A program made the translations under genes and the position numbers. A model generated the notes under the pieces. It was not told where the DNA came from. It saw nothing but the letters and a program-made list of their open reading frames with translations, and did not search any database. Below are positions 12,410-62,899 of a stretch of 64,000 nucleotides of DNA, in pieces. Source of the stretch: Camelus dromedarius (Eukaryota); the NCBI RefSeq assembly GCF_036321535.1, contig NC_087451.1, positions 41,974,001 through 42,038,000 on the forward strand, read 5' to 3'. Numbering within the stretch: the first letter of the stretch is position 1; every line of letters begins with the position of its first letter.

Positions 12410-13080
12410 TCATACAGAAATGGAGATAATGACATGTCCCTACCGCGAATCCTCACAGAATTCATGAGATAATACCCTGGGTAACTGATAGTAGATGAGG
12501 GGAAGTTTCTCTTTATAGAAAAAATCCAGCTAATAAATGAAGAAGGAAAGATAGCATTATCACCATGTTTCACCACGCCCCTCACCCCCGGGAATGACTG
12601 GGTCCAGGCATTGGGCATCAACAGCTGCTAATGTCATGAGAAGGAAGCCAACTAGACATTATATCCCTTTGATGGAAGAACACAACACCTACTGTGATTT
12701 TAATCTAATCAAGCTTCTAGACTCAACTGTCAATTTACAGGAATTATAAAATACAGAGAACTACCTCGTGGGTTTGTAATCATCAAAGCCCAGATGGACA
12801 GTCTATAGGATGTATGACCTGCCTTCTTCAATAATAAATTGCAAGGAAAAAGAGAAAGATGAAAGAGAAACCTGTGGATTAAAAAGAGATTGAAGAGACA
12901 TCAGCCCATCACAACCGAGTGCATCTTATTTGGATCTTCATTTAATCTAACTGTTAAAAAATGCCTTTTGACATAAAAACAACTGGAAATTTGAACACTG
13001 ATCAACTGAATATGTAATGATATTAAAGAATTCTTGTTTTAAGAAAGACATTATTGTTTTAAGGAAGAATTATTGTCTTA
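12410..13080 (+). mobile_element. Ancient L1M 3' fragments
   Basis: L1MC/ME-like 3' UTR motifs. Confidence 0.5.
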
Positions 13081-36091: not shown

Positions 36092-36337
36092 CACTTTTGA
36101 ATTTCCCCGAAGGCCAGGCCCTGTGACTTCCTTGGGAAGCTCTGCACCATCACCCCCACCCCTGCACTGCTGGAGTCCGGGGCCACTCTGGTCTGCAGCC
36201 CAAATCCTGCCTCGTTGTGCTGGGGGCCAGGCCGGGGTTGGAGAGAGGGCCCGGCTGGAGGTGTCAACTTTGCTGGGGGAAGGATGGCCTGGGCCCTGGG
36301 AAAAAGACTGACTCAGATTGGATCTCCACCCTGACCT

Positions 36338-36343
36338 AATAAA
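36338..36343 (+). terminator. RDM1 polyadenylation signal AATAAA
   Basis: AATAAA about 250 nt after the RDM1 stop codon. Confidence 0.6.
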
Positions 36344-36502
36344 GGTCGTGTCACTAAAGGTGTGTCAGAAATAATGGGTGGGGCATGAGGCAGGGGAGGG
36401 GTGCACATGTAGCCAGGCTGCCATATCGCTTGGGTTTCCATTCAGCACACCAGGCCAGAGCCCCACTGGCCTGGGTCGCTGTGCCCAAATCGTCTGCAGA
36501 TC

Positions 36503-37709
<1,207 letters not shown>

Positions 37710-38009
37710 TAAGAATTGCTTTTCCTCATTTGTTCTCTGCATCCTGCCTGACCTGGCAGCCTTTCTTTGAGGTCTTCCTGGGTCTTCCTCATCTCCCTAG
37801 TTCACATTGACTGTTTTTACCTTTTGTCTTATAAGCAATTTCTTATCTTCATTTGCCTTCTTACTATCATTCCTTCTTCTCTAGTCTTTTACTTATAATT
37901 GCCCTTATTCTTTTTCCTTCTCTATTTTTTACTCCATTATTTAATTTCTTAACATCTACTCTTCTCTCATTTTTGCTCCATCCTCGTTCCAGCACCATGT
38001 CCCTCTCCC

Positions 38010-39055
38010 CATCCCATTGTGGGTAATACAACAAAGTGGTTAAGAATAGAGATTCTGGGGTCAGACTACCTGGGTTTGAATCCAGGTCTGCCATTTGTTA
38101 GCTTTGTGACTCAGTTTTCTCATCTGGAAAATGGGGATTATCATAGTCACCATCTCATAGGATTTAGATGAGTCAATACATGTAAAGCTTTTTTATCAGT
38201 GCCTAGCATATATCTGAGTGTTAGCCATTATTATTATTTGATCCCTCAGTTATATTGAGAACTCATCTTTACCCTCTGGATTTCTATATATAGCACCCAA
38301 TTTATGCCCAACCCAAAGCTAAGTACTGTGGGAGCCACAGAAGTATGGCATTGTCTCCAGAAAATGACAGTGATAGGTGGGAAGAAAGGGAATACACCTT
38401 AACAAGGAGGTGATGTGTAATTGAGTATTAAAAGAGATACAGAGAGGTGCTGTAATTAACCAGAACCTGGAATCACTGGGGTGTGGAGGTCAGGGGAAAC
38501 TGCACGGATAAGCTAAAACTTTAGCTGGGATTTAAAAGACTGGCTGTGATTTGTTAGAGTAAAAATAGGGAGTACAGTCTAGGGAAAGATGTGGTTGCAG
38601 GAATCATCAGGATTTAATAGATCAATCTAGCTGTAAAGAATTGGGTTAGGCAGCAATGAAAGATATGCTTATGAAAGACCTTGACTGTCACAAATGGGGG
38701 TTTGAAAAATATGCTATAAGATACAGGGAGCCATTGAAAATTTTCAGGGAAAAGAGATAAGTGATTAAAATAAGAAGCTTATTTTAGATTCCAGATGTAA
38801 TGTGATCTAGAGAGGAAAGTTTGATCCAGGGAGACCAAATAGAATGCTGTAGCAAAATCTAGGAGGAAAGTGAGAATGGGCTGAATTGGAGTGGTTGTGA
38901 CAGGAGCAGAAGAGAAATCCTGAGAGCACTACAAAGGAAAAACCGACAAGATTTAGTAACTGTCTAGAGTTGGTGGGGTGGGGGGAGGTGTACAGGAAAG
39001 AGAAAAATCAAATATGTTGATGAGGAGAATGATGGTGGTACAACAGGTCGAAATA
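38010..39055. mobile_element. MIR and L2 fragments between LRRC37 copies 1 and 2
   Basis: GGGTTTGAATCCAGGTCTGCCA MIR core and purine-rich reversed L2. Confidence 0.6.
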
Positions 39056-39058
39056 CAG

Positions 39059-39738
39059 TTGGGAAGGAGAGCTTGGACCCTGGGAAAAAGCCTGACTCTG
39101 GTTGGATCTCCACCCTGACCTAATAAAGGTCATGTCACTAAAGGTGTGTCATAAATAAAGGATGGGGCGTGAAGCAGGGGAGGGGCGCACATGTAGCCAG
39201 GCTGCCATATCGCTTGGGTTTCCATTCAGCGTGCCTGGCCAGTGTCCCACTGGCCTGGGTCACTATGCCCAAATTGTCTTTGGATCATGTTTCCACATGT
39301 TTTTTTTTTTTTTTTTTTTTTGCTGCGGCTCTTTGCTTGGCAACCACTCTGGCTTCTGGCCCAGGGAGTTCAGCCCCTGGAATGGTCCCTGGACTCTATC
39401 CAGCTGACCTCCAACTCAGAGCTGGGGGACTTTAATTACTCCTTTAATTCCTTCTCTACAGCCTCATCAGGAGTTGACTGAGACTTTGCTTCCATACCCA
39501 GACAGGAATACAGATGGAGAGCTGCCCACTGGGCCGTATCAGTTTGCTGTTCCACGTCAAGATGGGAATGACACGCTAACCCAGCATCAAAAGCTCCCAG
39601 AGGAGGTTCCAGTGGTAGGCTGGGGTTGGAATTAGGTCCCAGCTCTGTCTCCTCAACCCAAAGGTAGTAACATTAAAGCTGCAGACGTAGATCAAGCTGA
39701 AGATCACCAGTCATCTCTACGAGGTAAGAGTTCAAAAC
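39059..39738 (+). pseudogene. LRRC37A: Duplicate of RDM1 3' end plus LRRC37 5' segment (copy 2)
   Basis: Aligns by eye to about 36275-36965, including CCTAATAAAGGTC; T-run insertion at about 39299-39321; 16-nt deletion near 39462. Confidence 0.87.
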
Positions 39739-40640
39739 TCAGGCTGCCGTAACGCTTGGGTTTCCACTCAGCGTGCCTGGCCAGTGAGGGTCGCTGTGCC
39801 CAAATCATGTGCAGATCATGTACACATGCTTTTGGTTCCCATGACCCCTCTTTTGTGTGGCAACCATTGTGGCTGCTCTTCCAGGCAGTTCAGCTCCCGG
39901 AACGGTCCCTGGACTCTGTCCCACTGACCTCTGACTCCCCTGGGCTGAGTGAGACTTGTCTTTTGCAATCCTCTAATCTCTCACCTGAATCTCCCCATGC
40001 GCTTATCAAGGGGTGCGAAAACCTGCGACCCCACTGAGGAGTCTTCTCCAATCCAACAGGAGTTCCCAGCCCCACTCCTGGAACACATTAGGGACAAAAC
40101 AACATTCTCTAGCCCAGCAGGAGGCCCCAGCTAGCCTTCAGAGCCACCTCAGGAGGTTGTAGCACAATCTCCAGTGCATCGTGAGTTGACAGTTCCAGCT
40201 CTCAAGCTGAAGCTCAGCATTCAAACTCGTCACAGTTAAACCTTTCAATCTGGGCCTCACCATAACTCCAGCAGCTACGATGGAGGGTGAACGTCCTACA
40301 GCCCTGAAGCAGACATGTGGGAGAACCCCGCTCAGCCTCTGGGGCCACCTGAGGAGGCTGTAGTACAGCCTTCATGGGTTCAGGCTGTGGCAGCTCCAAG
40401 TCCAGTTCAGGGTTCTAACTCAGGATCCAACAGTGCCCAGCAGAGTCGGGGCTGAGGCTTCAGGGCTGCAGCACTCTGGCAAGCTAGGGGGTGGGGCCGC
40501 GGAGGGGCGGGATGGCTGAGACGCCAATGAGCAGGGGCACAGCAGCCCTCTAATCCCACAGAGACTGGCCTTGAGACCACCCTGCTTCAGAGCCCTCCCC
40601 TTTCCCAGCCCAATCCCCATGCCACACTGACCCTAGCCTT
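39739..40640 (+). pseudogene. LRRC37A: LRRC37 exon-1 remnant (copy 3), degenerate
   Basis: WQPLWLLFQAVQLPERSLDSVPLTSD...SPESPHA followed by frameshifted LRRC37-type repeats (QQEFPAP, QQEAPA, AEAQHSN, VKPFNLGLTITP). Confidence 0.78.
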
Positions 40641-41934
40641 CAGCCTGCATTGCCACTAATGGCCTGTCCCTTCCATTTCCCACCTGTGACCTGGCCCCAG
40701 CCCTACCCCCACCCCTCACCAACGGTCTTGCGTAAATGCAGCCTCACCCTGCCTGGGGAGGAGAGCCCGAGGGTCCCCCAAATGCCCTGCCTTCTGCCTT
40801 GCCTGCGGTTGACCACTTGGGGCTGGAGAGGAGGGCATCAAGCTGTGACACCCCCCAGGAGGAGTTGAAGGTTACCGGGACCTGCCCTTTGGAGATACAG
40901 ATGGCCATGGGCAGAGGCTGCCGCAATTAACCGTTGTGTCAGTGTGAAAAGGAGTCCCAAGGATTAGAAACAAAAAAACCAGAGGTCACCTCTAATCTTT
41001 CTTGACTGAACTTTTACAAGGCTTCACTCAGCACCTGCTGACTGCAGGCGAGGCCTGGTGGCCCTCTAGTTTGACGCCACGCTGTGCCCCTTTATGACTA
41101 CTTTTCACCCCGTCAACCTCTGGTCTGTTCTTGTGTTTTTCTTCTCTAAATTATAAACCTACATCCCAAACATCTATTATCTCCCACCTCAATCATGCCC
41201 TACAGGTACGATTTAAGAGGACTGGTAATCAGCCCAGCCACTTCCTAAACTATGTCACCTTGGGCAAGGTACTTAACCCCCGTCTCAGTATCCTCATTTG
41301 TAAACTGGGTATAACAGTCACAACCTCAGAGTACAACTGTACTGATTAACTGGCTAATGCGACTGGTGTACAGAGAGCACTCAGGAAGTGTGGGCTATGA
41401 TGAAGTCCCTCTGACCTTCGGGTCATGCCACGTGCCGCACACGCAGCTGTAGCCACTGTATCTCTTGTGTTTCCTCTGAGACTATGGCTGTGTCTAACCT
41501 CTACTTCTAATACTTCACACAGTGTCCAGCACACAGAAGGCGTTCAATAAGCTATTAACAGGAACTGATGGAGAAGCCGGCCCTGAAGAGCCCTGGTCAT
41601 TTAGGAAGCCAGTCTTGAGAATGTTCTCAGGAACCCGTCAGCCATAGTGCAGTCCTCCATGGAGTCTCCCAGCAGGAGGATGTTGCTTTTGCCCTGCAGC
41701 TGCTGGAAGTAGCTGGAGTTCTCGCACACAGGGCTGTTCTTGTATGTGTGCATGAGCTGGCCCTTGAATACCCCTAGGAAACCCTAAATCATCAAGACAA
41801 GGGACAGACAGAAGGGCTATAAGGATCCATCTGGGGCCAGTTTCCCACTGTCTCTGCCACAGAGGAAAGGGAATCCAGAAAGCCATAGATAGTGCCAGAA
41901 CTTCATTGCAGTCAAAACTCAGGATCAGCAAGCG

Positions 41935-42130
41935 AGGGCTCGTGGGCTAGATTTAGCCTGTTGGTAAATTATGTTTTACTGGAATACAGCCAGGCCCATT
42001 TGTATACATCTTGTCTATGGTGCCTTTTGTGTGCGACAGGGTTGAGTAGTTGTGACAGAGATTGTACTGCCCACAAAGCCTGAGATCTTTACTACCTGGC
42101 CTTTACAGAAGAAGTTTACACCCCCTGGTT
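41935..42130. mobile_element. MER58A-like hAT element
   Basis: TTTTACTGGAATACAGCC...GTTGAGTAGTTGTGACAGAGA...GGCCTTTACAGAA motif. Confidence 0.75.
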
Positions 42131-42879
42131 TAAACTAACAGGGACCATCAAATATTGTCAGTCACCTCCTCTGGCGGAGGCACATGGCCTGTGATGCAAG
42201 CACTGCTCCAGCTCACCTCAGCTGTGGGCCACACCCTAACCACGGGTCCAAGGGATGAAAATTCCAGCCATTGGTTTTAAGGGGAAGAAGTCAGAAGATG
42301 GGCAAGTCAGAGCAGCCCACCTCTAGCTCCAGAAAAACAAGTCCAAGCCAAGCCCTTGAGTACCTCGGATGGCACATGATCCACGACAGTGACATGGAGC
42401 CTGGGTGACCCCTAAACTAGGTCCTCCCTGGCAGAGAGCTGACTGTTGTCCAAACACCCAAAAGTGGGTCCTTCAAAAGTAACTGTCTTTAGATGGCATT
42501 AATTAATAAATCACTGTCCAGGAGGAAAGAAGCCAGACTGCCTTCCCCTCCCCCACCAGGGTTCATGTTTAGGGAGAAGCCCCCCAGCTGGCGGTCCCCA
42601 CCCCTCTCCCAGGCCCTGCCCAAATGAGATTTGACTCACGTTTTCATCAAGCTCCATGCAGTTAGCCACAATGTGGATGCTGGGGTGAAACACTTTTTCA
42701 TCTGCTGGATAATTTCTTCCACGGTATCTCCAATGCCCGTGGAGAAGATGAAGAGCGGAATGCTGTTCTGGAAGAGGGTGTTGAAGAACATCTTGTACCC
42801 ATTCCTGAAAAGAGATCAATGGGTTCTGAAATAGCACTGCCTCTGCTACTGTTCTTTATTTTCTACTTGGGTTACTTTA

Positions 42880-43110
42880 AAAAAAATTTTTTTAAACATT
42901 TTAAATTGAGGTACAAAACACATACAGTAAATGGTTAAAGTGCACTAATTTTACAAGTTCAGCTTAATTAATATTTACATATGTATACCCCCAAGTAATT
43001 ACTAACCAGATCAATGTTCCTTAGTGTCCCTTCCCAGTCAAAGCCATTTTGACTTCACATCACCATTGATCAGCTTTCCCTGTCCCTGAACTTCATATAA
43101 ATGAGCCCCT
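42880..43110 (-). mobile_element. Old L1M 3' fragment
   Basis: TTTTAAATTGAGGTA... L1 3' UTR motif. Confidence 0.6.
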
Positions 43111-45713
43111 ATTTTTTTGTTTGTTTGTTCCTGGATTATTTTGCCTTAGGAAATACAACCAGGCAGCTGTCCTGGGGCAGCTCTGCAGAGGAATACCCCA
43201 AACCGCCCCGGGCACTTACTGGGTCTGCACGTGTCTCTACTCCCCTGGCTTTCCGTGAGCTAGCGTCTTTCCCCAATCAGGACACAATCCTTGAGGGCAG
43301 GGACCCGTGTTGACTCCTTCTAAGTGCCCTCAACCCTCCTCCAGTAAAGAATGCTCCAGCAGAGAGAGCTGCGCTGTGAAGGCTACGGATGATCAAGGGT
43401 CCCAGGCTGGCCAGCTCGTGTCTGGGTAAAGAATGCCAGTCACCATGGGGACTTGGAAAGTCTTTTTACCATTGGGAACAAGGAGCTAGATACTGTTTGT
43501 TCTAGGAGATGGAGCCCTGGTCATATTCGCACCATACCCACTACTGGCAGACTCCTTCTGAGGAAACATTCAGGGGTAGACAATCCCCTGGCTGTGCCCA
43601 GAGAGGAAAAAGAAGACCTTCTCCACGTCAGCTGCTCACGGTGCCATGTCTCTTCTGACTCTTCCAGCAACAAACTCCACTCCACTCCTTCCCAGCCTTC
43701 TCTTCTGTGAGCAAACCCATTCCAAACAGTCTGGCAGAAATGTTTTCCAGAGCAGGCAGCTCACCTGAGTGTTGCATCGGACTCTCACCACCGGGGCTCT
43801 CTGAAAGCCCTGGACCTTCTGCTGCCATAGGAGAGCATGCAGTTTGGTCCACCCGGAAACAGACGCCCCACAAACCCCCCAATTCAAACCACTAAGTCAA
43901 GTGTCCTCTCCCATCTCAGGGCTGTGTCCCCTCTGGAAGTTCTGATGGCAGAGGAGGCCTCTTTTCCCTCAGAGCCACTTCCTGAAGAACCCTGGCTGTC
44001 CTTAAAGGAAGAGGGTGAGACAGCAACACAGCACAGTAGAGACGAGAGCTGGCGAGATGACACTGAGGTCAAAGCTCTCCTGAGTCCCTTCCTCTGTGAC
44101 CCCACTCTCTGGAGAACTGGGGCTTTGCCCAGTGACACTGGCTTCCTTAGGAGGGTTATCGCCCCAAAGCACTTAATACCCCAAACCAAAGGGCTTCTAA
44201 CTCATTCCAAAGATTCTCCGTAAGCCCCCTACTGTAGCCACAGCCACAAGTAACGCTGGCTGTGTCTGGTCAGTTAGCTCTAACACCTGGGCTTGTGGCT
44301 TTCGGTAAGGTACAGGAGCTTGCTCCTCAACAAAGCTCAGGAAAAACAGACCCTCTCCCAGACCAACCCACTGTGAAAGCCAGCGGCGTTTCACCACCAC
44401 CATCACTTACCATTCCACCATGTGGGGCAAATTCTCTTTGATGGTCCAGTGTGGGTCAATCTCAACTGGGTAATAGTGGTGAAGGAGTGCTTTGAGCTGC
44501 GACATTCAAAATGAAGAGAAAAGCCAGTAGTCCACATCAGGTTTTCCCCAGCAGAGGCTTACTGTGCAGTGTGAGAAAAAAAATCACACCTAGATGTGAC
44601 TTCATGTAATGGAGTGACTGGATCTGCACAGCTGAACTTCCCTCTGCACTCACCCTGAGAGAGTGAGGTCCAAGCATCAACCATATAAAGAGCTTTTGCT
44701 CTCAGATGAGAGGTTATTAGGATTTTGCTGCTGTGGCTGTTACAAATTAGGTCAGCATCACATCAGCACTTAACCAAGAAGAACTGATTTAATATTGTAT
44801 TTCCCCAAATAGGTACACTTCCTCAGGTGGTAGGTAAGATAACTTTGGAGGGGGGGAAATGGATAAAAACACTTTTCATTTGAGTAATTTTGGATTCATT
44901 TCAATGTTAGAAAAAGAAGGAAAACTAACATATCAAACTCATGCTTTCATAAAAGATTGTTTCTTTTTCAAGTTAATTACATTCAGGTCTTTAAAAGCAG
45001 GGCAATTTACACAGATATGGCAGAAATCACGCAAGTGAAACTGGAAGGCTGTAGTTTGGGACGCAGCATGTTAGGGGGTAACTGTCACACTGCCAACGTC
45101 AGGTGGACCACCTTCACGGGGAGCATCTATGTACCTTCTCTGGTTAAAGGTCACCTTCCACATGCCAGGAACTTCCACACTCTAGGGAAGCCACTACAGG
45201 GATCACGTGTCACACGGGATGGGTCAGTAACAATACCCAATAAAAATGGGAATTGATTAAGTAAAGAATTCTAATTTTAATATATGCATGGTCTCAAAAT
45301 ATGAGAGCAAATGGAATCCCCAATCATCAGTCCAAAAGAGGGTTAAATACCAAGCTTGTCGAAGACAGAAAATTCCTTAAATGTGTTAAGATTCTCAATG
45401 TTTTCTTGTGTGAGAATTTTTCTAAAAATATGAGAATTCAACAAGAATATAACTGTTGAAAAAGGAAAAGAAAGAATTCTTACATAAATTTTGCCTTTAT
45501 TAATTTCTTCAGGAACCCATCAGCACCAAGAATCTTAGTTTTCCCTAGCTTCTTTATCCTAGACAGAGCATTCAAACCTACTGTCTTATTTGTGGACGCA
45601 GCTTTCTGGAGGTTGCTAAAATCAGGGATGGGAGAAACCAAAAAAAGTGACTTGCCAAAGGTACTCAGTTACTGGAGAGGGAACCTACTTTAAGCTAAAA
45701 GTGGCATCCCCTG

Positions 45714-45823
45714 GTGGGAGGGAAATAGTTCAGTGGGAGAGCACCTGCTTAGCATGGACCAAGTCCTGGGTTCAATCCCCACTAACTCCACTTAAAAAAA
45801 AAGTGTTTAAAAAAAAAAAAAAA
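45714..45823 (+). mobile_element. Vic-1-type SINE
   Basis: tRNA-like head plus A-tail, in NT5C3B intron 2. Confidence 0.85.
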
Positions 45824-45879
45824 GGGCATCTCCAGAGAGACAGGCTTTAGAAATATAAGAGCCTCCCCAGCCATCCCCC

Positions 45880-46400
45880 AACCCCACCCGGCCGCCCCCA
45901 CCTTGCCCCCGGCGGTACTTGTAAGCGGTCTCCCCCACCCCTGCGGAGGGCGCCCACAATCTCCTGCACCAGCCCGGGCTGCCGCATCAGGACCGTTGCC
46001 TTCATCAAGGTGCTCACCTGTCCCGAGACCCGAGAGAACGGCTGACCTCGGCACGGCGCTGAGCCCATGGGGAGCCTACTGGCCGCGGTGACGCGGCGGG
46101 ACCCGGGTGGCCCGCTGTGGGTCTCGGAGAGCCGGAGGCTCGGGACCCGCCCTACGCCGGTCCCCTTCTTTCGCCTCGCCTCCTCCGTCATGGCGCTCAA
46201 ACGCTGGTCTGAGGCGTTGGGCCAACGGCCGCCTCGCGGCCGTACTGCACAGGCGTCGCCTCCCGCCTGGGCGGGGGTGGGCGTGCCGGGGGGGGGTGGG
46301 CGTGCCGGGGGTGGGCCCGCGGGCTGCAGGCCCGCCTACCCGCAGAGCCGCCAGAGGCAGGCGGCCTCGCGCGGTTGGCGCGGCGCGCTAGGTGAAAACC
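45880..46400. promoter_or_regulatory. CpG island at the NT5C3B 5' end, head-to-head with KLHL10
   Basis: CpG-dense, with GC boxes around NT5C3B exons 1 and 2. Confidence 0.75.
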
Positions 46401-46845: not shown

Positions 46846-47345
46846 TGTTACTGAGTCCAAACTCGTTCTGCTAGCTTCACCACAGGCCAATAAATCGGGA
46901 GACGAGGTGTTGGGGCAAGGAATAGGACTTCATTCAGAAAGCCGGCAAACTAATGTCTTGGAGAACCGTCATCCTCCAATCAGAATACAGGGTCCTTTTA
47001 TACAGAAAAACAAGGGAGAGGATGTGGTTGGTTGTTGCAAAATTCTTGCTGCAGGAATTCTTTGTTTCTGCAGCTGTCCACGTAGGCCAGGTCATGGTAC
47101 TCCTGCAAAACTTCCAACAAAACAGAGGTTATTTTCTATTCTGCAACTTATCTTTATATAAGTGCAGAAGTGTTAATATCCTCAGAGCCTTGAGAGAAGG
47201 TTCTTCTGTTTACCAGACAGGCTAAAGGCAATATTCATTTACAAAAGGTTGCACAGCTGGCAAGAATAAGCCTAGAAAATGGCACAGTGGTTAGAGCTAA
47301 AGGAACAGATCCAATATAGAGTCAGATTTGTTTCCCTGTATTGTA
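46846..47345 (-). mobile_element. Solo LTR, ERV1-like (copy 3), between NT5C3B and KLHL10
   Basis: Reverse-complement homologue of copies 1 and 2; near-TSD ATAT/GTAT. Confidence 0.87.
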
Positions 47346-47654
47346 GTATGTGGTGTTGGTGGTCACAGTCCTGCTACTGGTTGCAGAAGGTGTGGGGTGG
47401 TCTTCAGCCTGAGGTGGTGTGTTGGGGGAGGGGAGAAAGAAGGAGGACAGGGACAGGAGAGAGTTCCAGAGCCTGAGAGCACAATCCTGAGAGTGATCTC
47501 ACTGCAGGCCCAGGATTCTGGAACTTTGGCTGCCTGACAGGCCCTATATGAAAGATGTAGTAGGGAAAAGGAGTGACAGCTGGCTAAAGGGGCCCCCCAC
47601 AACACTCCCCGACACCCTAGGAGAGTAGCCTCTCCCCACTGGTCCCAGGGTGCC

Positions 47655-50600
47655 ATGGAGATGGAGAGCGCCGCGGCCTCCACACGTTTCCACCAGCCTC
47701 ACATGGAAAGGAAGATGAGTGCGATGACTTGTGAGATATTCAACGAGCTTAGGCTGGAGGGCAAGCTCTGTGACGTGGTCATCAAGGTCAATGGCTTTGA
47801 GTTCAATGCCCACAAGAACATCCTCTGTAGCTGCAGTTCCTACTTTAGGTATAACAGGGTTGCTGAACTAAGCCAATGGGGGAACTGGGCTCATTCTGAG
47901 CCCTTTTGATTCATTTTATGTTTCCTACACTGTTATCTTAAGCTTAGGGACAATGTCAAAGCCCTGGGCTCCTGTAGGCTGGCTCTTTTGTCTTCTGTAG
48001 AGGTACAGCCTGTGCCAAAGCTTCTCTCTCTCTGGTTTTCAACTGGATTTCAATCAACTATTGGTGGGCCGGGTGCTTTTTCTCTTTGACTTTCATATAA
48101 ACCAAACTTTGGGAAGGGTGGACACCTGTACTGGATTTCCTACTTAAACCTAGATGACAGTTCCACTTCAGCCACTCCTTAAGTCCCTGTCTGAGACTAT
48201 CTTAAACAGAGTGATAAATTAACAAGGATTGAGAGGATGGGAAGGGGGATGAGAGGAAAGAACAAAGGAAGTATTTATTAGAAGAAAAAGGGAGTTTGAG
48301 CCCAAATCATTGGAACCTAGGAAGTTAAGAGCTATTTTGTTCATGAGCTGAAAATGTTTGAGTACTCAGTTCCAATGAAGATATGATAAATGCATCCCAC
48401 CTGTTGCTAAAAATTCTCTTTCAACTATCCCTAGAGCACGGTATACAAAAAGAAAAAATGACTACTTTAAGCTTTGCAGGCCATATAGTCTCTGTTGCGA
48501 CAACTTCACTCTACCTTCGTAGTGGGAAGGCAGCCATGGACAATGCTAAATGAAAGGGCATGGCTGTGTGCCAATAAAATTACTTATGGACTCTGACATT
48601 TGAATTTATTGTAATTTCCAGGTGTCACAAAATCTTTTGATTTTTCCCTCCCTTTAAGAAATGTAAAAACCTTTCTTAGCTCATGGGCAGTATAAAAACG
48701 AGGTAGGCTGAATTTGGCCCAGGGGCTGTAAGTTTGCAGACCTCTTCTCTAGAGAATTTGGTCTCAGAGCCCATAATCCCTTAAACCTCCTAGAAAAAAT
48801 GAAGCAAAAAATATATTAGGCCAGGGACTGTCTCGTGTGACACCTAGAAAAGTACCTAGCTCCATAGCAGAGCCCAATAGGTAGCTGTGGGGCAAAGCCA
48901 GCAGGATTGGAACAAAGCGAGAAAGCCAGAAGGAATATGGTCAGAGAGGTATTCCTGGTCCAGATCTCAGAGGACTTTTGTAGTCCCTGGTAAGGACTTT
49001 GTATTTTACTCTGAGGAACGAGGGAAGTCAGTGGAAGGTTCTGAGTAGCCGAGGAGCATAAACTCATAAGGCTCACTCTGGTGGCTGGGAGAAGACTATA
49101 AACTCTGGAGGTGTCAAAGGCAGAAGCAGGGAGATCAGTTAGGAGGTGACACCCAGTAATCTAGGCAAGAGATGGTGGTGGCCTGCACCAAGAAGGTAGC
49201 AATATGAGGTGAGAAGTGATCAGGCTCTGGATGTGTGCTGACTGAATACACTTGTTTAAAAAGTGTATTTGCTCAAGTTTAATTTCCTTAAGCAAAGTAG
49301 CATTTGGTGGGCAATGGGCTGAGACAGATGAGACCTGGGTCTTACTCCAGCTGTGGGTTCCAATTTCTCCATCCAGAAAATGGGGAAAAGGCCTACTTAT
49401 CATGAAGATAGGAATAAAAATGACAAAAGTCAAAGTTCTTGGAAAGGTTCTCTTGCCCACTGTATAAAGCCAGCCCTCCCCCTCCCCTTCCTCACACCAG
49501 TTTATTTCCAGTGTATTCACTGTGTGCTATTTGGAAAATGGCCAAACTGTCTGCAACAAGAAAATGGGGGACAGCGTGGCAAACTGGAGAGAAATGTTTC
49601 AGTGACTGCTCACTTTTTTCTTTTTTCCAGAGCTTTGTTTACAAGTGGCTGGAACAACACTGAAAAGAAGGTATACAACATCCCTGGCATTTCCCCCGAC
49701 ATGATGAAGTTAATTATTGAATATGCGTACACCCGGACCGTCCCCATCACACCTGACAACGTGGAGAAGCTGCTGGCTGCTGCAGACCAATTTAACATCA
49801 TGGGTATTGTCAGGGGTTGCTGTGAGTTCCTCAAGTCGGAGCTGTGTTTGGATAATTGTATCGGCATCTGCAAGTTCACAGACTACTACTACTGCCCTGA
49901 GCTGAGGCAGAAGGCCTACATGTTCATACTGCACAACTTTGAGGAGATGGTGAAGGTCTCAGCAGAGTTTTTAGAGCTCTCAGTCACTGAACTTAAGGAT
50001 ATCATTGAGAAAGATGAGCTCAACGTCAAACAAGAAGATGCTGTATTTGAGGCCATTTTAAAATGGATTTCTCATGACCCCCAAAATAGGAAGCAGCATA
50101 TTTCAGTTTTGCTTCCCAAGGTCATTTAGTCATTTTTTTGTGGGACGCTTAATTGTTCACTTTTGATTCATTTATCCCAGAGGGATTGTCCCAAGAGCCA
50201 GACTCAGATGTTCTGACAGATTCCAGGGCTGTAGTTACACGTCCATACACTTAGATATGTACACATAGAGAAGGCGTCTCCTGCTATTCTCTGGAATTTT
50301 GCAATTTTCTTTGCCCCTGCATAGCTAGTTCCTTCTACCCTAGTTGTATTCTCTTTGACTAAAATTCTTCCTGGTAGTGGGGGAAGGAGAGGGCAGGCCT
50401 TCAAAGGAATTTTAGTCTTCCTTTTACCCTTCCCCTTCTGTGGGTTTCCCTAACTGAGACAGGGGTTGGACTAGAAACCAGACTATGAGTTTTGCACTCA
50501 ATTGTAGCCATTTGGTGCCAATTCATGTTATTTCGCATACAGAGACATAGGTATCCAACCTCTGAATGATGACCACAGCTTTTTCTGGTCTAATAATCCA

Positions 50601-52666
50601 GTCCAGTGGCCAAGGAATGGCCTAGCTCTGTGACCATTTGAGATAGCTTCTATTAGCTCATTCTCAGCATCCAAATGTATACCACCTCCAAAAAATAAAT
50701 ATTTCAACTGTGAGTTGTAAATTTACAAAAACAAAACAAAACATGACCCTACTGCAATTCAGAGGCAGACAGTAAAACTGTGGTCTTAAGGACATGGATT
50801 TTCCAGAACCCTCACCTCATCTGAATGACTTNNNNNNNNNNNNNNNNNNNNNNNNNNNNNNNNNNNNNNNNNNNNNNNNNNNNNNNNNNNNNNNNNNNNN
50901 NNNNNNNNNNNNNNNNNNNNNNNNNNNNNNNNNNNNNNNNNNNNNNNNNNNNNNNNNNNNNNNTATGACCTAAACATGAACGGACCTTCAAATTCTGACT
51001 TCACCAACCCACTCACCAGGCCCCGCCTGCCNNNNNNNNNNNNNNNNNNNNNNNNNNNNNNNNNNNNNNNNNNNNNNNNNNNNNNNNNNNNNNNNNNNNN
51101 NNNNNNNNNNNNNNNNNNNNNNNNNNNNNNNNNNNNNNNNNNNNNNNNNNNNNNNNNNNNNNNNNNNNNNNNNNNNNNNNNNNNNNNTTATATCATTGGG
51201 GGGTTCGATAGCGTAGACTATTTCAATAGTGTTAAGCGTTTTGACCCAGTCAAGAAAACTTGGCACCAGGTGGCCCCGATGCACTCCAGACGTTGCTATG
51301 TCAGCGTGACAGTCCTCAGNNNNNNNNNNNNNNNNNNNNNNNNNNNNNNNNNNNNNNNNNNNNNNNNNNNNNNNNNNNNNNNNNNNNNNNNNNNNNNNNN
51401 NNNNNNNNNNNNNNNNNNNNNNNNNNNNNNNNNNNNNNNNNNNNNNNNNNNNNNNNNNNATGGAAAGGTAAGATGCCGGATGGCAAGGGAAGCAGCTTTA
51501 GGGAATGTGAAAGCAAACAGGCCCAGAAATAATGGTTTTTAGGGGTGGATGGAAAACAGAAATGGCAGTATCTACTCTGTAATACTAACTCCTCCATCGA
51601 ATGACTAAGTGGCCCTTTGTAACTATCTTTTGTGATTCTTACTTATTTTTTGGTGGGGGGAGGTAATTAGGTTTACTTATTTATTTATAACAGAGGTACT
51701 GGGGATTGAACCCAGGACCTCGTGCATGCTGAGCACATACCCTACCAATGAGCTACACCCTCCCCGCTTTCTGTGATTTTACTTACTAAAAAGCAATGCT
51801 TGTACATGAGGAAAAAAGAAACTCAGATTGCAGACGCAACAGAAACGTCCCTCACCTTACTACCGCATTCATACCCTTTCTACTCCCCAGGAGTAAGTTT
51901 TAATAATCTTGGAACTCTCTTCACACAGGTCTACATATGTGGTGGGTTTAATGGAAATGAATGCCTGTTTACAGCAGAAGTGTACAACACTGAGAGTAAT
52001 CAGTGGACAGTCATAGCACCCATGAGAAGCAGGAGGAGTGGAATAGGCGTAATTGCTTATGGAGAACACGTATATGCAGTGAGTCTTTGTACAACAAAAA
52101 TAATAGCCCTAGATTTTCTATTAGCAAAGAAGTTTACAATTACCATTGGTAATAATTTGAAAGCTTTTCTCCCATGGAAGATAGTGGAAAAGGGAGGTAT
52201 GAAATCACTAGTTTCCCTGCCCCCCAAAGAGGGCATCCTCAGTGAACAGAAGTGATGGTTAACAGCCAGCCGTTTCCTCTGCTGTCCACAGGTAGGCGGC
52301 TTTGACGGAGCTAACCGACTTAGGAGTGCAGAAGCCTATAGCCCAGTGGCTAACACTTGGCGCACGATCCCCACTATGTTTAATCCTCGTAGCAATTTTG
52401 GCATCGAGGTGGTAGACGACCTCTTGTTTGTGGTGGGTGGCTTTAATGGCTTTACCACCACCTTTAACGTTGAGTGCTATGATGAAAAGACCGACGAGTG
52501 GTATGATGCTCATGACATGAGCATATACCGAAGTGCTCTAAGCTGCTGTGTGGTACCAGGGCTGGCCAACGTTGGGGAATACGCAGCTAGACGGNNNNNN
52601 NNNNNNNNNNNNNNNNNNNNNNNNNNNNNNNNNNNNNNNNNNNNNNNNNNNNNNNNNNNNNNNNNN
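47655..52666 (+). CDS. KLHL10: Kelch-like protein 10 (spermatid CUL3 adaptor), expected 608 aa; exons 47655..47848, 49631..50120, about 50850..51467, 51929..52078, 52292..about 52666 (exon 3 start and the stop codon lie in N-runs)
   Basis: MEMESAAASTRFHQPHMERKMSAMTCEIFNELRLEGKLCDVVIK (BTB), BACK region and kelch repeats (YIIGGFDSVDYFNSVKRFDP, VYICGGFNGNEC, VGGFDGANRLRSAEAY). Frame is preserved across the Ns. Confidence 0.96.
48430..48752. mobile_element. MER58B-like hAT element
   Basis: TTTGCAGGCCATATAGTCTCTGTTGC...GGCTGTGTGCCAATAAAA motif. Confidence 0.75.
48820..49260 (-). mobile_element. L2 fragment in KLHL10 intron 1
   Basis: GGTAAGGACTTTGTATTTTACTCTGAG...GGAGATCAGTTAGGAGG motif. Confidence 0.65.
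51640..51765 (-). mobile_element. Vic-1-type SINE
   Basis: Reverse SINE body in KLHL10 intron 3. Confidence 0.85.
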
Positions 52667-52869
52667 NNNNNNNNNNNNNNNNNNNNNNNNNNNNNNNNNN
52701 NNNNNNNNNNNNNNNNNNNNNNNNNNNNNNNNNNTTTAAACTTGTAAGAGTACTGGAAAATGTTCAACTTAAGGGAGCCAAGGGTTGGATGACTGAAGGG
52801 AGTGAGATGGGAGGAAGAAAGCAATTATATTCAATGATGCATAGTTTAAAAAGGAAAAATCACAGTGCA

Positions 52870-56811: not shown

Positions 56812-59800
56812 CTAGCATTCTATCTGAGAGCTTGGCACTCGCCGCATGTTTAGGGCATGCCGATGTATTTCCTGCATCTGTCTGATCCGGTCCTTCTGCC
56901 ACATTAAGTTTTGAGGCATAGGGTATCTCTGAGTGCCATGCAAGTACCGGTATGGGATTCTCACGTGGCAAGCAGTGGCTCTACAACGAGGCTGTGGCAT
57001 GGGAGGAAGAAGCATCCACCTCTTTCTCTCAGCACAGTATCGGTAGGCTTCTTTCCGATACTGTTTGTCAATATCATCACTGTTTTTCCAGCCCCCAATA
57101 ATGAAAACATCATCTTTGTAATAGCAAATGGCTGCTCCTTCGATGCTTAGGACTTCTGGAGGTAAGCTTTCAAGGATCTCATCGGAAACTTGGCTGGCAA
57201 TTTTTCTTACTGCCTCTTCATTTTCTATCGAATAACTCTTGGGACAGCATGAGGCTGTCTGGTAAAAGTTTGAANNNNNNNNNNNNNNNNNNNNNNNNNN
57301 NNNNNNNNNNNNNNNNNNNNNNNNNNNNNNNNNNNNNNNNNNNNNNNNNNNNNNNNNNNNNNNNNNNNNNNNNNNNNNNNNNNNNNNNNNNNNNNNNNNN
57401 NNNNNNNNNNNNNNGGCAGCAATGTACACAAACCGGTCTTCAATAGCTAGNNNNNNNNNNNNNNNNNNNNNNNNNNNNNNNNNNNNNNNNNNNNNNNNNN
57501 NNNNNNNNNNNNNNNNNNNNNNNNNNNNNNNNNNNNNNNNNNNNNNNNNNNNNNNNNNNNNNNNNNNNNNNNNNNNNNNNNNTTTGACTTCTGTCAGCCC
57601 AAAAGAATGCTTCCTTGTCATCAGACTACAAACATGTTCCCACGTATTCAAATTTGGGTTATATCTTTCCACAGTTTTAGCAAATCCTGGTTCCATTGAC
57701 CCAGCAACATACACATAGGATTCTGTTACTGCAACAGCATGTCCATCAAGGTGATTATGAATATGGGGTAGGTTTACCCATCTGTCCTCATCGACAAAAT
57801 ATCCCACACATTCACTTAAATAGTCTCCTCCTTCTGACACGCCTCCTATAACCATGATCACATCCATGTTCTGCCCATAGCGAGGTAACAAAGAAACATG
57901 AGAAGCAGGATGCTGGAACGTGCCAGACTGTATATTCTCAGCTCTCAGAGCATGCCTCTCCACTGCATCGGCCACTAACTTGACACAAACTTCATTATTG
58001 GCCACCAGCCTCTCTGGTTTGACATGACGAGTAAGGTAAGTAGGTTTCATCTGGGACAATCGGAGCAATTTAAAAAGTTCTTCAAAGTATCTCTCTCTCT
58101 CTTCAGCATTTCTCTGAACCCACTTTAAAACTGTTTCAAACAGAACCTCTTCAGAGTCAACCGTAATCTCCAAGTCTGACAGCCAGTCTCGAATGAGGTG
58201 GAAAGGTAAAGTATAAAATTCCTCATCCTGAATTACTTTGTGGAAATTTCTCCGTATCATATCTGCAGCTTTCAGAGCAAGTTGGCTCAGGGTATACATG
58301 TGAGCTAAGCTATGGATGGCCACACAATTAGAGAGATGAAGTTTTTTCTTGAGAAATTCTCCACAAAATTCTTTTAAACGAATTAATAGGAACCTAAAAT
58401 CAAGAAAAAGAAAAGGGATTAATTTTCAGATGTGCATATTTTATGTGGTTACATGCTGAGAGTATCTGAATTATACAGATGGAAATGGTAATAAGCTTCA
58501 TCTCACGTCATGTACACCACCTGAAAAAAAAGTGTGAATCCAAGTTAAAAAGGATTGTGCTGAAAAGTATGTTTAAAAGCATATATAAAATCATCTTTAT
58601 ATATTTTAATTATACATTTTATATATTTTAATTATTTCCATTATACAGTCTATATGTAATTATATGTTAAACTAAATACATACAATACATACAAAATGGA
58701 GTTTTTAGTTACATAAGGCTTTTCAGAATATATCCTTTAACAAAGTACAGTAGTCCCATATTTTATTTCCACTTTAATTTACCCTTGGCAAAGGCAAATC
58801 TCAATCCAAACTTCTCTCTGCCATCCTGCCCTAATCCCTTGCCAGCAACCAGCCTCTTCTTCAATCAGGCTGGTCTCAGTGAAAAGACTTTTTAAAGCAT
58901 CAATACATGGTATAGGAACTATGACTCCTGGGAGGCTGTTTGATCAGATCTCAAAGGGAATGGCAGTGCAGGCTTTGTGTCAGAGGTTTTAATCTTCTCT
59001 TCCCGAAAACTTTCTCCCAGAGTAGCCCAGAGCTGGGGGCAGGCGTAGTGCTCAGGGGCTTTGACCTAAACTGGGTTCTTCTCATTGAAGCAGGGTGGCA
59101 AGGCTAAGTCAAACATCTGAAGAAGCCAGGAAATAAAATAACAACAGAAAACATGTGTAGGATGGTCCATGTTAAAAAAGAAAGTGGTTTGCCATGTAGC
59201 TGACTAGAAATTGCCTGCCCACATATAGTTAATCTGGCAGAATTCAGCCCTTGAGGGTGACCAATTTGAGACCATTGCTTTAAAGAGAGTTTAAGTCCCC
59301 AGAACTGAGAACATTAAACAATGTAAGAATGATTTCATCAGTCCAGTCTCCTCTCACTACAGTAAACATTTGCTATTATGATTACTGTGCTTACTATGAC
59401 AAAAGGGTGAATTTCAAGGCTGGCTCCCTTCACTCTCTTCAGGGAACATACCATCTCAGACAAAGACAAGATAGAGTGAAAGCTCTGGCAGCTCTTGAAC
59501 ACGTCTGGGTGCTGGGTCACTCATTCTTGGGCTGCCCCACCCCCTCCTCGGAGCTCCTATTTTGGGCAGGAACTACAGGTAACCCAACACATATTCTCTT
59601 GAACAGGTGTTTGGAAACATTTCTCTGAAAATAATAGCTATCGTATACTAGGCATGTGCCATGTGACAGGCATCATTGCTGGGCACTTTCTATTATTTCT
59701 TTAGTGCCCTGCTAGGTGGGCATGATCAACAGATAGAGGATATGGCGGGAGGTGGGGCAGTAGGTAGGGAGAGGAATCCTGCCTTGGAGCTGATGGGTGA

Positions 59801-62800
59801 GACTGGACGTGATGGGTGCAGTGCCTAACATGAGGCAGCTGCTCAGCAACTGACATACGGAGAGAAGTTAGAGTTTTAAGTAAAATGGGGTGTTCTCTCC
59901 TCTCCTTCACCCCAACTCCCCAATAAAGCAGGGGCAAGTCTGGAAGAACACAAGCTCACATGACAGAGCAGATGCAGCTTGAGTGAGTGCAATGACCCTT
60001 CTCTATCCATTTTCATTCAACAAATTTCCCTCTCTCAGACCTGTATCTACCTGCCACACCCCACCTTCTAATAGATGACCCAGCCTCATGCTTTGAGAAA
60101 ACAGAAGCAATCAGGCAGAAACTTCATTTTCCTGCCATCCAATCTGCCTGCAGCTGTACCCTATACTCTGCCTTCCCAGTCTAACCTCTCTCTTTTTAAT
60201 ATAGATTCTATCCCTTTCTTGGTTTCAAGGGCTTTGGTCCTGTAACATCAATTTTTTCTCATTCACTGATGCATTTTTCATCAACACGTAAACATGCTCC
60301 AGTTTCTCCTATCTGGAGGATGGGGTGGGGAAGAGACCTCCTTGGACTCCTCCCCAAACATGTCTATGTGCATCATTTTTCTGATGCTCTTTACAGCCAG
60401 ACCTAAATGGCTCTTGTCAATGCCATCAAGAACCTCTATTATCACTGAATCCATTGACCACTTATGGATGACAGAGTTGACACGACTGGCTCCTCTCTCC
60501 TTGAAGCTTTTTCTAGGCTTCCATGGGATCAGTCTCCTCTGCTGGTTCCTCTGTAACATTCTGGAGAACCCTAGGGCTCAGTCCTGCTTCTTCTCTTTTC
60601 TATCTACACTCTTTTCCTAAATAATTTCATCCATTCCCGTGGCTTTAATTACCACCTAACCTGCTAATTTCCTTCCAGTCTCTAGCTCCCCATGCTGTTC
60701 TGTCCAACTGCCTACTAAGATATCTCCTGGACCAAAAAACCAAACTCCTGATCCTCCTCTCAAATGCTTTCCTGCAGTCTTCTATATCTTAATGAACAAT
60801 GAACAACTCCATCTTTCCAACTGCTTGGGTCAAAAAACTGGCAGTCTTTTCTCTCACACCCCACATCAAATCCATCAGCAAATCCATCTCCTCTACCTTC
60901 AAAACAGATCTAAAATTGATGCACTTTGCCATCACCTTTACGTCTCTCTCCTCAATCCAAGCCTCCACCACCACTGCAGCAATGTCCTGAACTAGTCTCT
61001 GCTTCTGCCCTTGCAGCCCCTTCCTCACCAGCCCATCCTTTTTCTCAACACAGAATTCTCCAAATTAGACTGCATCATTCCTCTACCCCAAACTTTCCCA
61101 TCTCATTCAGAGTTAGAGCTCAAGTCCTTCCACAGGCCGACAAGGCCCTGGGGGATCTGGATCCATCCCCAGGTCTCTCCGACTCCTCTTACCCTGCATC
61201 CTTTGATCCAACCACACTGGCCTCCTGCTATCCTCTAATATCCAGACCAGCTCCACCTCACAGTCTTTGCACCTGTGTCCCCTAAAGGAAACACCCTTTA
61301 CCTCACCTCCTTCGGTTCTTTGCAAAATATCTTCTTCCTCACGAGGTTTTCTCTATCCATCCAATTAAAAAAAGAACAGCTCCTCTACACCCATTTTCTG
61401 TATATCCTACCATGCTTTATTTTTCAGCTAATGCCATCATATCCAACACACTATCTTACTTATTTATTGTCCATCCACCAATGCAAGCACACGAGGAAAG
61501 GGACTTTTATCTATTTTGTCCACTGCTGAATCCCCCGCAGCTTAGAACCCAGTGTCTGATCTGATGTGTAACAGGCACTTAATAAGTATTTGTTCAAAAA
61601 ACGAATCTGTAACTTAATACTGCCTAAACAGACTCCTCCCCATTTCCAAAGTGCATTCACCTGCCTCCTAACCAGTCCCGGGAGCATCCACCCCTGCTCT
61701 CTACAATCCATCTTCCACAGTAGCAGAATCATCTTTTAAAATATTTAAATCAGATCATTTCATTACCCGGCTTCCCATCATCCACTAAAATCCAAACTCC
61801 TTTTTCCAACGCATTTCACACACTCTTCTCCCCTTCACCTACTAGATACAGGTTCACTAAATTTTCCTTTTTCAGTTCTTGTCTAAGCCAAACAGCATCC
61901 TGCCTGAGGGCCTCTGCGCTAGTTGCCAGGAATGGTCATTCCCCATCTTTGCATGGCCAGTTCTCCTTGGCTGTTTGGAGATCGGTTTAAATGTCACCTC
62001 CTCATAAAGGTCTTTCCTCTAAGCAATCACTATCCTTTCATCTTTTTAATGTCAACACAGCATTTATTACATGCAGACTTTTTCATTGCCTTTGTCCCTC
62101 CACCTGGAATCTGAGCTCCCTTCTTAAGAGCGGGGTGACCTAGATGGACTGGCTGGCTGCCTCCTCAGTGCCCAGAGCAGTGGTCTCCCCACAGCACACA
62201 GCAGGCTCTCAGTAAATATCAAACGAATGCACTTCGTCAGGGCTACTCGAGCCCCCCCCCCTCCCCGGGCACTGCCCTCTCCGCCTTCCGCGGCCTCCCT
62301 GTACGCGGCCGGCGTTCGGCGAGCATCTTAACTTCCCCGCCCTCCGCCGCCTACCTGTCGGCCAACTCCAGCACTTCGTGCACACTGCCCGTGCTGACGC
62401 GGATGCGCCCGGTGTACATGTATTCGATAACGGCTTCCACCGTGTCGGGTTCGGGCCCGGGCTCGGAGCTCCACTTGCGCATCTCCACCCGGCCCGAGCG
62501 GGACTCGGAGAACTGGCCCGAGAGCAGGGGCGTAAAGTACTCGGTGGCGGCCGCCAGCACCGAGCGGTGGGCCCGGAACTCGCGGCCTCCCGCACCGCCG
62601 AAGCACAAGGTAATGTCGCAGAAGAGGCCCTGGCGCCGTTGCTCGTTCTGCCGCCACGACAGCTCCGAGCAGTGAGAACTACATTCGAAATCCTCGGCCT
62701 CCGGGCCCGGATCGCCGCCGCTCGCCTCCATTGCAGACAAGCCCGGCCCATGCCCGAAGTCCACCGTGCCACTGCCTCTGACTTCGGCGGCCAGCCCAGC

Positions 62801-62899
62801 TGAGCCGGCGGCGGCCGTCTCCATGCTCTCCATCTCCAGCACCTGAAGAGACGCAGCAGCAGCCGCCGCCGCCGCCGCCGCCACTGCCGCCGCCGCCAT
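56812..62899 (-). CDS. KLHL11: Kelch-like protein 11, 708 aa; exons 62899..62355 and 58393..56812
   Basis: 545+1582=2127 nt; poly-Ala N-terminus, BTB ([16 protein letters not shown]), BACK and kelch repeats; ends [10 protein letters not shown]. Confidence 0.97.
59990..61760 (+). mobile_element. L2 fragments in KLHL11 intron 1
   Basis: C/T-rich L2 ORF remnants and a 3' end ...GGCACTTAATAAGTATTTGTTC. Confidence 0.75.

What the first reader, a model, noticed from the sequence alone, without database searches (positions are those of the whole stretch)
41597..46191. NT5C3B (m7GMP nucleotidase) is disabled: candidate unitary gene loss
Seen, against the recalled ortholog: exon 1 donor is GC rather than GT (46179); exons 3 and 4 are not found in the 1.4 kb between exons 2 and 5; exon 6 acceptor is GG rather than AG (43854-43853) and the exon is 88 nt versus 90 expected; exon 7 is 165 nt versus 163; exon 8 has 3-nt and 7-nt deletions with TAA at 41603-41601 and no GT donor; exon 9 is absent. 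Knowledge: exon 3 encodes the HAD DxDxT catalytic motif (DFDMT), and cN-IIIB clears m7GMP left by mRNA cap turnover. Inference: this copy is non-functional. Because it is next to intact KLHL10 and KLHL11, it is probably the ancestral locus, which would mean loss of a cap-catabolism enzyme.
Basis: partly seen in the sequence, partly recalled or inferred. Interest (0 to 1): 0.75.

Follow-up and report, generated by a model that had tools for sequence, protein, structure and literature searches.

The report
Camel NT5C3B is a dead gene
In camels the gene for the enzyme that clears the m7GMP left over from mRNA cap breakdown survives only as a broken remnant at its original chromosomal position, with its last exon cut off by a chromosome rearrangement, so camels probably live without this enzyme.

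Summary
On the minus strand, 46191-40742, lies an intron-containing remnant of NT5C3B (cN-IIIB). It sits head-to-head with KLHL10 and next to KLHL11, as in goat, vaquita and fox.

Compared with those three loci:
- the exon 1 donor is GC;
- one deletion removed exons 3-4, which carry the catalytic DxDxT motif;
- the exon 6 acceptor is GG and the exon lacks 2 nt;
- exon 7 has 2 extra nt;
- exon 8 lacks 3 and 7 nt and its donor;
- homology stops about 7 nt into exon 9 (40742/40741).

Beyond that point lies an unrelated block instead of FKBP10. So exon 9 was removed at a rearrangement junction.

The remnant and the junction are held by short-read data from several studies. Both are also present, 99.2-99.4% identical, in Camelus bactrianus and C. 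ferus assemblies, where the locus is annotated as short junk proteins. No difference falls at a lesion that those sequences cover. The surviving exons have evolved almost neutrally (35 non-synonymous to 14 synonymous changes), so the inactivation is old.

Two things were not tested: whether an intact copy exists elsewhere in the genome, and the state in alpaca or llama. I found no paper reporting this loss. Verdict: an ordinary kind of event, a lineage-specific unitary pseudogene, in an interesting enzyme.

The parts
46178..46191 (-). NT5C3B exon 1 remnant (ATG at 46191-46189, 12 nt) with donor GC at 46179-46178
   Evidence: Alignment to goat L002, which has GT at this site. Same in C. bactrianus L005.
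45919..46017 (-). Exon 2, 99 nt, open, with normal acceptor and donor
   Evidence: tblastn at 88.6% identity to pig residues 4-38; nucleotide alignment.
45860..45884 (-). Junction of the deletion that removed exons 3 and 4 (HAD motif I, DFDMT, and part of the cap domain)
   Evidence: Goat 10389-12001, vaquita 10347-11953 and fox 10394-12970 have no counterpart here; homology resumes at once on the far side.
45712..45824 (.). tRNA-like SINE insertion in intron 2, flanked by a 9-nt target-site duplication (GGAGATGCC / GGGGATGCC); about 40 nt from the deletion junction
   Evidence: Read from the sequence. The outgroups are contiguous across the site.
44411..44496 (-). Exon 5, 86 nt, open, splice sites kept; carries R93W
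43765..43854 (-). Exon 6 (43852-43765), 88 nt instead of 90 (2-nt deletion), with acceptor GG instead of AG at 43854-43853
   Evidence: Alignment to goat; many non-synonymous changes.
42640..42804 (-). Exon 7, 165 nt instead of 163 (A3 to A5, a frameshift); HAD motif II stretch LFIFS kept as remnant
   Evidence: The same frameshifted reading is in the C. ferus model P0348.
41593..41783 (-). Exon 8, 191 nt instead of 201 (3-nt, 1-nt and 6-nt deletions); TAA at 41603-41601; donor removed by a 16-nt deletion; motif III remnant GDSMED
40751..41592 (-). Remnant of intron 8, alignable to goat, vaquita and fox
40741..40750 (-). Vestigial exon 9 acceptor (AG at 40750-40749) plus about the first 7 nt of exon 9; homology to all three outgroups ends at 40742/40741, the rearrangement junction
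   Evidence: The stretch 40680-40805 is held complete in DNA runs under two organism labels from several studies and is present in L005 and L006.
36277..40740 (+). Foreign block abutting the junction. It holds proline-rich repeat ORFs, an ORF with an LRR N-terminal cap (37020-37712), and tandem partial copies (39061-39714 and 39740-39937 resemble 36277-36924). Other notes of this scan call it LRRC37.
   Evidence: No homology to the FKBP10 side of goat, vaquita or fox; self-similarity; LRRNT lead at 0.84 only; no Pfam hit.
46846..47348 (.). About 500-bp repeat (solo-LTR-like) inserted between the NT5C3B and KLHL10 starts. It is absent from goat, vaquita and fox, and two more copies lie in the window.
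   Evidence: Gaps in the outgroup alignments; copies at 27677-28169 and 11406-11931.
47592..52747 (+). KLHL10, divergent neighbour; open in all unmasked exons
56812..62899 (-). KLHL11; both exons open apart from masked N runs

Best explanation
This is the original NT5C3B gene of the camel lineage, now a unitary pseudogene. It cannot make a cN-IIIB enzyme. The exon with the nucleophilic aspartate (HAD motif I) is deleted, the reading frame is broken in exons 6, 7 and 8, three splice sites are damaged, and the last exon was separated from the rest by a chromosomal rearrangement. That rearrangement placed an unrelated, LRR-gene-bearing block where FKBP10 used to be. The decay is old: the surviving exons have evolved at close to the neutral rate for most of the time since camelids split from other cetartiodactyls. 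It is fixed in the genus Camelus. By inference, camels clear m7GMP through the paralogue cN-IIIA or other nucleotidases. Shown here: the lesions, the synteny, the junction, sharing among three Camelus assemblies, and the near-neutral substitution pattern. Inferred: that no second copy exists, which lesion came first, and the biochemical consequence.
For: Synteny: KLHL10 - NT5C3B - FKBP10 in goat, vaquita and fox. The window aligns to them from KLHL10 through intron 8 and stops at 40742. Lesions. Identity as cN-IIIB rather than cN-IIIA. No exon 3, 4 or 9, no 3'UTR and no FKBP10 homology anywhere in the 64 kb. Not an assembly artefact: 14 DNA runs hold all 505 sampled 31-mers of 41500-46300, and runs of both organism labels from several studies hold all 9 sampled words across the junction. 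The C. bactrianus chromosome assembly (L005) and a C. ferus scaffold (L006) are 99.2-99.4% identical, with no difference at any lesion they cover. Relaxed constraint: 35 non-synonymous to 14 synonymous changes on the camel branch, against 1:9 in goat and 3:14 in fox; omega is 0.7-0.95 with a 95% interval of about 0.4-1.9. The only camel proteins of this family that the searches returned are 172-aa and 144-aa junk models built on this locus. Motif roles: PMC3946280.
Against: The rest of the genome could not be searched, so an intact copy elsewhere is not excluded, for example one beside FKBP10 or a retrocopy. Cluster membership in the protein database was only partly visible: clusters of 38 and 172 members showed 15 names each. 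RNA runs hold 28-81% of the sampled words of the locus, introns included, and also the junction. The remnant may therefore be transcribed, and I could not look at reads. No New World camelid sequence was reached.
Confidence: 0.8

Rival explanations
1. The window holds a decayed partial duplicate, and the functional NT5C3B stayed with FKBP10 at the other end of the rearrangement.
For: FKBP10, exon 9 and the 3'UTR are missing from the window. An earlier unchecked note (s1-198333) reports a related duplicon 26.5 Mb away, next to a JUP fragment; from my own knowledge of the human gene order, JUP lies on the FKBP10 side. '-like' in the NCBI name of P0321 is compatible with this but says little.
Against: The remnant lies beside the only KLHL10 and KLHL11 seen, and both are open, so a duplicate would require duplicated neighbours as well. 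Homology ends inside exon 9, which is what a cut through a single gene looks like. None of about 350 held family members is closer to the remnant than ordinary orthologues, all at 72-78%. No full-length camel protein appeared among the names shown.
Confidence: 0.08
2. The locus still makes a shortened functional protein, as the public annotation implies (172-aa '7-methylguanosine phosphate-specific 5'-nucleotidase-like').
For: NCBI and the C. ferus annotation call proteins here. RNA runs hold parts of the locus.
Against: The models read through introns and stop in them. They lack motif I, and P0321 also lacks motifs II and III. [quoted passage not shown] The exons evolve nearly neutrally.
Confidence: 0.03
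3. The lesions are sequencing or assembly errors.
For: The exon 7 insertion lies in an A run, a place where long-read assemblies err.
Against: Every sampled 31-mer is present in 14 DNA runs from five study codes, two of which are flagged as possible sources of this DNA. The same sequence is in two other assemblies, one of them the older C. ferus CB1 assembly.
Confidence: 0.01

Closest known systems
Human and other mammalian NT5C3B (cN-IIIB, 7-methylguanosine phosphate-specific 5'-nucleotidase; PDB 7ZEE; Pfam PF05822 UMPH-1)
   Same: Same chromosomal neighbours, same exon-intron layout, and 75-78% residue identity in the surviving exons. Remnants of motif II (LFIFS) and motif III (GDSxxD), and the WW of the aromatic slot, are kept.
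   Different: No motif I, no exons 3, 4 or 9, a broken frame and damaged splice sites, so not an enzyme.
NT5C3A (cN-IIIA, pyrimidine 5'-nucleotidase)
   Same: Paralogue with the same fold. The literature reports that it also hydrolyses m7GMP, less efficiently (PMC9144445), which makes it the likely backup.
   Different: The remnant is clearly the B paralogue (67.5 against 38.6 bits for exon 8). NT5C3A is not in this window and was not examined.
Lineage-specific unitary pseudogenes of mammals (a conserved single-copy gene decayed in place)
   Same: Ancestral position, introns kept, many independent lesions, near-neutral substitution pattern, and functional orthologues in all other orders sampled.
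   Different: One lesion here is a rearrangement junction that cuts the gene a few bases into its last exon. Most described cases rest on point lesions and deletions.
LRRC37 duplicons at rearrangement breakpoints of human 17q21.31 (PMC3530683)
   Same: The block joined to the truncated gene is called LRRC37 by other notes of this scan, carries tandem partial copies, and a second copy is reported 26.5 Mb away. In primates LRRC37 copies mark inversion breakpoints. Cow and dog have one copy.
   Different: I confirmed only an LRR N-cap-like ORF and the repeats, not LRRC37 identity. No inversion was demonstrated.

Membership tests
NT5C3B orthologue (cN-IIIB) | Sequence closer to cN-IIIB than to cN-IIIA | tested here: met
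   Exon 8: 7ZEE at 67.5 bits against cN-IIIA chains at 38.6 bits.
NT5C3B orthologue (cN-IIIB) | Conserved position, divergent from KLHL10, with the same intron positions | tested here: met
   Goat, vaquita and fox loci and alignments.
Functional HAD-type 5'-nucleotidase | Motif I DxDx[T/V] with the nucleophilic aspartate | tested here: not met
   Exon 3 is deleted and no match to residues 39-75 exists in the window. Role of the motif from PMC3946280.
Functional HAD-type 5'-nucleotidase | Uninterrupted reading frame with usable splice sites | tested here: not met
   Indels of -2, +2 and -7 nt; GC donor; GG acceptor; exon 8 donor lost; exon 9 lost.
Unitary pseudogene | Lies at the ancestral locus and keeps its introns (not a retrocopy) | tested here: met
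Unitary pseudogene | Lesions fixed, not polymorphic or artefactual | tested here: met
   DNA runs from several studies; C. bactrianus and C. ferus assemblies. C. ferus has an N gap over exons 1-2, so those sites were checked only in C. bactrianus. Camelus only.
Unitary pseudogene | Relaxed selective constraint | tested here: met
   35 N to 14 S changes; omega 0.7-0.95 against 0.03-0.06 in goat and fox.
Unitary pseudogene | No functional copy elsewhere in the same genome | not testable with these tools
   No whole-genome search of a camelid was available. The indirect evidence is negative.
Processed pseudogene | Intronless, with a poly-A tail and target-site duplication, at a new place | tested here: not met
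   Introns 1, 2 (partly) and 4-8 are present and alignable.

The most novel reading that the evidence does not exclude
The first hit was the rearrangement itself. In the camelid stem lineage, a duplicon-mediated break a few bases into exon 9 separated NT5C3B from its last exon and from FKBP10, and the rest then decayed. Camels, and probably all camelids, would then be natural knockouts of the m7GMP-preferring nucleotidase. That would show the enzyme is dispensable in a large mammal, with cN-IIIA carrying cap-nucleotide clearance.
Probability: 0.3. Interest if true: 0.65.

Novelty: new member of a known kind. Interest (0 to 1): 0.5.

Why it matters
cN-IIIB is conserved from flies to mammals, and every other mammalian order in the search has an intact copy. 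Yet its cellular role is still described as little known and only presumed to be clearance of m7GMP from cap turnover (PMC9144445). A mammal that has lacked it for a long time is a natural experiment. It predicts that cN-IIIA or another nucleotidase is enough, and it gives a system in which that can be measured. The case also shows a gene cut by an evolutionary rearrangement junction at base-level resolution. Finally, it flags two public protein models (C. bactrianus 172 aa, C. ferus 144 aa) as pseudogene artefacts.

Tried and rejected
There is therefore no read-level view of splicing, RNA ends or variants. Local alignments in scripts used the whole window file.
- Exact look-ups of four ORFs of the remnant (108, 128, 135 and 114 aa) found nothing on record.
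- No route to an alpaca or llama locus was found.
- Earlier notes of the scan hold nothing under 'FKBP10' or 'nucleotidase'.
- A weak tblastn match at 35494-35631 (24% identity, E 0.037, two stops) was judged to be chance.
- The Logan-only clusters P0120, P0133 and P0138 were considered as possible camel copies and rejected. They are no closer to the remnant than other orthologues.
- Pfam gave no LRRC37 family for the left-flank ORFs, and the Atlas gave only an LRRNT lead at 0.84.
- Paper searches for NT5C3B with 'pseudogene', 'camel' or 'gene loss' found nothing relevant.
Full report
**What is there.** The window is mammalian. On the minus strand between 46191 and about 40742 lie pieces of NT5C3B with their introns. 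tblastn of pig NT5C3B (P0102) finds residues 4-38, 76-101, 103-131, 132-188 and 190-256 in order. It finds nothing for residues 39-75 or 257-300. The exon 8 translation matches human cN-IIIB (PDB 7ZEE) at 67.5 bits and cN-IIIA chains at 38.6 bits, so this is the B paralogue. To the right lie KLHL10 on the plus strand (BTB and BACK domains) and KLHL11 on the minus strand. Both are open in all unmasked exons. I did not fill or look up the N runs in those genes.

**Ancestral position.** I fetched the NT5C3B loci of goat (L002), vaquita (L003) and fox (L004). All three read KLHL10 (minus), NT5C3B (plus), FKBP10 (minus). The window aligns to each of them continuously from KLHL10 through the shared promoter region, and through all NT5C3B introns that remain, at 70-84% identity. 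So this is the original gene, not a retrocopy.

**Lesions.**
- Exon 1 donor is GC (46179-46178).
- A single deletion has its junction near 45862-45884. It removes 1.5-2.6 kb of the outgroup sequence, including exons 3 and 4.
- Exon 6 acceptor is GG (43854-43853), and the exon has a 2-nt deletion.
- Exon 7 has a 2-nt insertion.
- Exon 8 has a 3-nt deletion and a 1+6-nt deletion, which bring TAA into frame at 41603-41601. A 16-nt deletion removes its donor.

Exons 2 and 5 are intact. A SINE with a 9-nt target-site duplication sits about 40 nt from the deletion junction. It is a separate event.

Exon 3 encodes motif I (DFDMT). Its first aspartate is the nucleophile of this enzyme class (PMC3946280). 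Motif II and motif III survive only as remnants in frames that no longer connect.

**Exon 9 and the junction.** Homology to goat, vaquita and fox runs through intron 8 and the exon 9 acceptor (AG at 40750-40749), continues for about seven bases of exon 9, and then stops at 40742/40741 in all three comparisons. Exon 9, the 3'UTR, the intergenic region and FKBP10 have no counterpart anywhere in the 64 kb. The sequence to the left of the junction has no counterpart in the FKBP10 side of the three outgroups. That left block holds proline-rich repeat ORFs, an ORF with an LRR N-cap-like end (an Atlas lead at 0.84 only; no Pfam family), and tandem partial copies of its own 5' part. Other notes of this scan call it LYZL6-RDM1-LRRC37 and place the synteny break at 40600-41600 (s1-207579). 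I refine the break to 40742/40741. A further unchecked note (s1-198333) reports a related duplicon 26.5 Mb away beside a JUP fragment, which hints at a large rearrangement between duplicon copies. I could not test that.

**Is it real and fixed?** Fourteen DNA runs from five study codes, two of them flagged as possible sources of this DNA, hold all 505 sampled 31-mers of 41500-46300. DNA runs under two organism labels, from several studies, hold all nine sampled words of 40680-40805 across the junction.

A protein search with the ORF over exon 2 returned a 172-aa NCBI model named '7-methylguanosine phosphate-specific 5'-nucleotidase-like [Camelus bactrianus]' (P0321). A search with that model returned a 144-aa Camelus ferus model (P0348). 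Their loci are L005 (a 60-Mb chromosome record) and L006 (a 357-kb scaffold). They are 99.3% and 99.2% identical to the window over 12.7 kb and 10.2 kb. These stretches include the junction and the left block.

None of the roughly 30 differences inside 40000-46320 touches a lesion, and none is an indel in an exon. L006 has an N gap over exons 1-2 and the deletion junction, so those sites were checked only in L005. The two other assemblies share nearly all of their differences from the window. The window therefore probably comes from the third Camelus species; this is an inference.

Both public models are artefacts. They read into introns, and P0348 contains the frameshifted exon 7 reading.

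**Age.** I built a pig-anchored codon alignment over the 206 codons the remnant still covers. The camel branch carries 35 non-synonymous and 14 synonymous changes. Goat has 1 and 9, and fox has 3 and 14. Against the neutral expectation this gives omega 0.7 to 0.95 for transition bias 1 to 4, with a 95% interval of roughly 0.4 to 1.9. Five indel events in about 620 nt of exon point the same way. By general knowledge the branch since the split from other cetartiodactyls is tens of millions of years long. The loss is therefore likely to predate the split of Old World and New World camelids. The lower bound does not prove this, and I reached no alpaca or llama sequence.

**Another copy?** Every other mammalian group in the search has a full-length protein, including pigs, peccary, hippo, whales and ruminants. 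No camelid name appeared among about 290 names shown, but large clusters were only partly listed. None of the held proteins is closer to the remnant than ordinary orthologues. The only camel family members the searches returned come from this locus. This is negative evidence, not proof. I put a functional second copy at under one in ten.

**Consequence.** The literature calls the cellular role of cN-IIIB little known. It reports that cN-IIIA also hydrolyses m7GMP, less efficiently (PMC9144445). The inferred state of camels is clearance of cap-derived m7GMP by cN-IIIA or other nucleotidases. I found no paper reporting this loss.

**Limits.** RNA evidence is therefore limited to the fact that RNA runs hold 28-81% of the locus words, introns and junction included. 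That could be unspliced RNA or DNA carry-over. The order of the lesions is unknown.

Noticed in passing
L005:10001-14497 and L006:10001-18427 (window about 46007-41510 and 44505-36080): Public annotations call protein-coding genes on the pseudogene. C. bactrianus has a 172-aa '-like' model and an adjacent 153-aa model with no Pfam family. C. ferus has the 144-aa CB1_000663001, which joins exon 5, the frameshifted exon 7 and sequence beyond the rearrangement junction. All look like annotation artefacts.
   Followed up: partly
window 46846-47348: A repeat of about 500 bp (solo-LTR-like) is inserted between the NT5C3B and KLHL10 start sites. It is absent from goat, vaquita and fox. Two more copies lie at 27677-28169 (80%) and 11406-11931 (78%). 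It may have affected the shared promoter.
   Followed up: partly
window 39061-39937 and 36277-36924: Tandem partial copies (82% and about 72% identity) of the 5' part of the LRR-gene block lie just left of the junction, so the foreign gene copy is itself truncated and rearranged.
   Followed up: partly
window 40680-40805 and 41500-46300: RNA-seq runs labelled as reproductive-system samples, and runs of organism B, hold the junction stretch completely and 28-81% of the pseudogene words, introns included. This may be read-through or unspliced transcription near testis-expressed KLHL10, or DNA carry-over.
   Followed up: no
protein P0012 (181 aa): A database ORF reads like an intronless, decayed NT5C3B: exons 2-8 are contiguous, with degenerate motifs. 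It is probably a retrocopy in some unidentified organism and is not closer to the camel remnant than other proteins.
   Followed up: no
pig NT5C3B cDNA L001:79-981: On the same 206 codons the pig branch shows 9 non-synonymous to 9 synonymous changes, clearly more than goat (1:9) or fox (3:14). The numbers are small, but this may mean relaxed constraint or adaptation in pigs.
   Followed up: no
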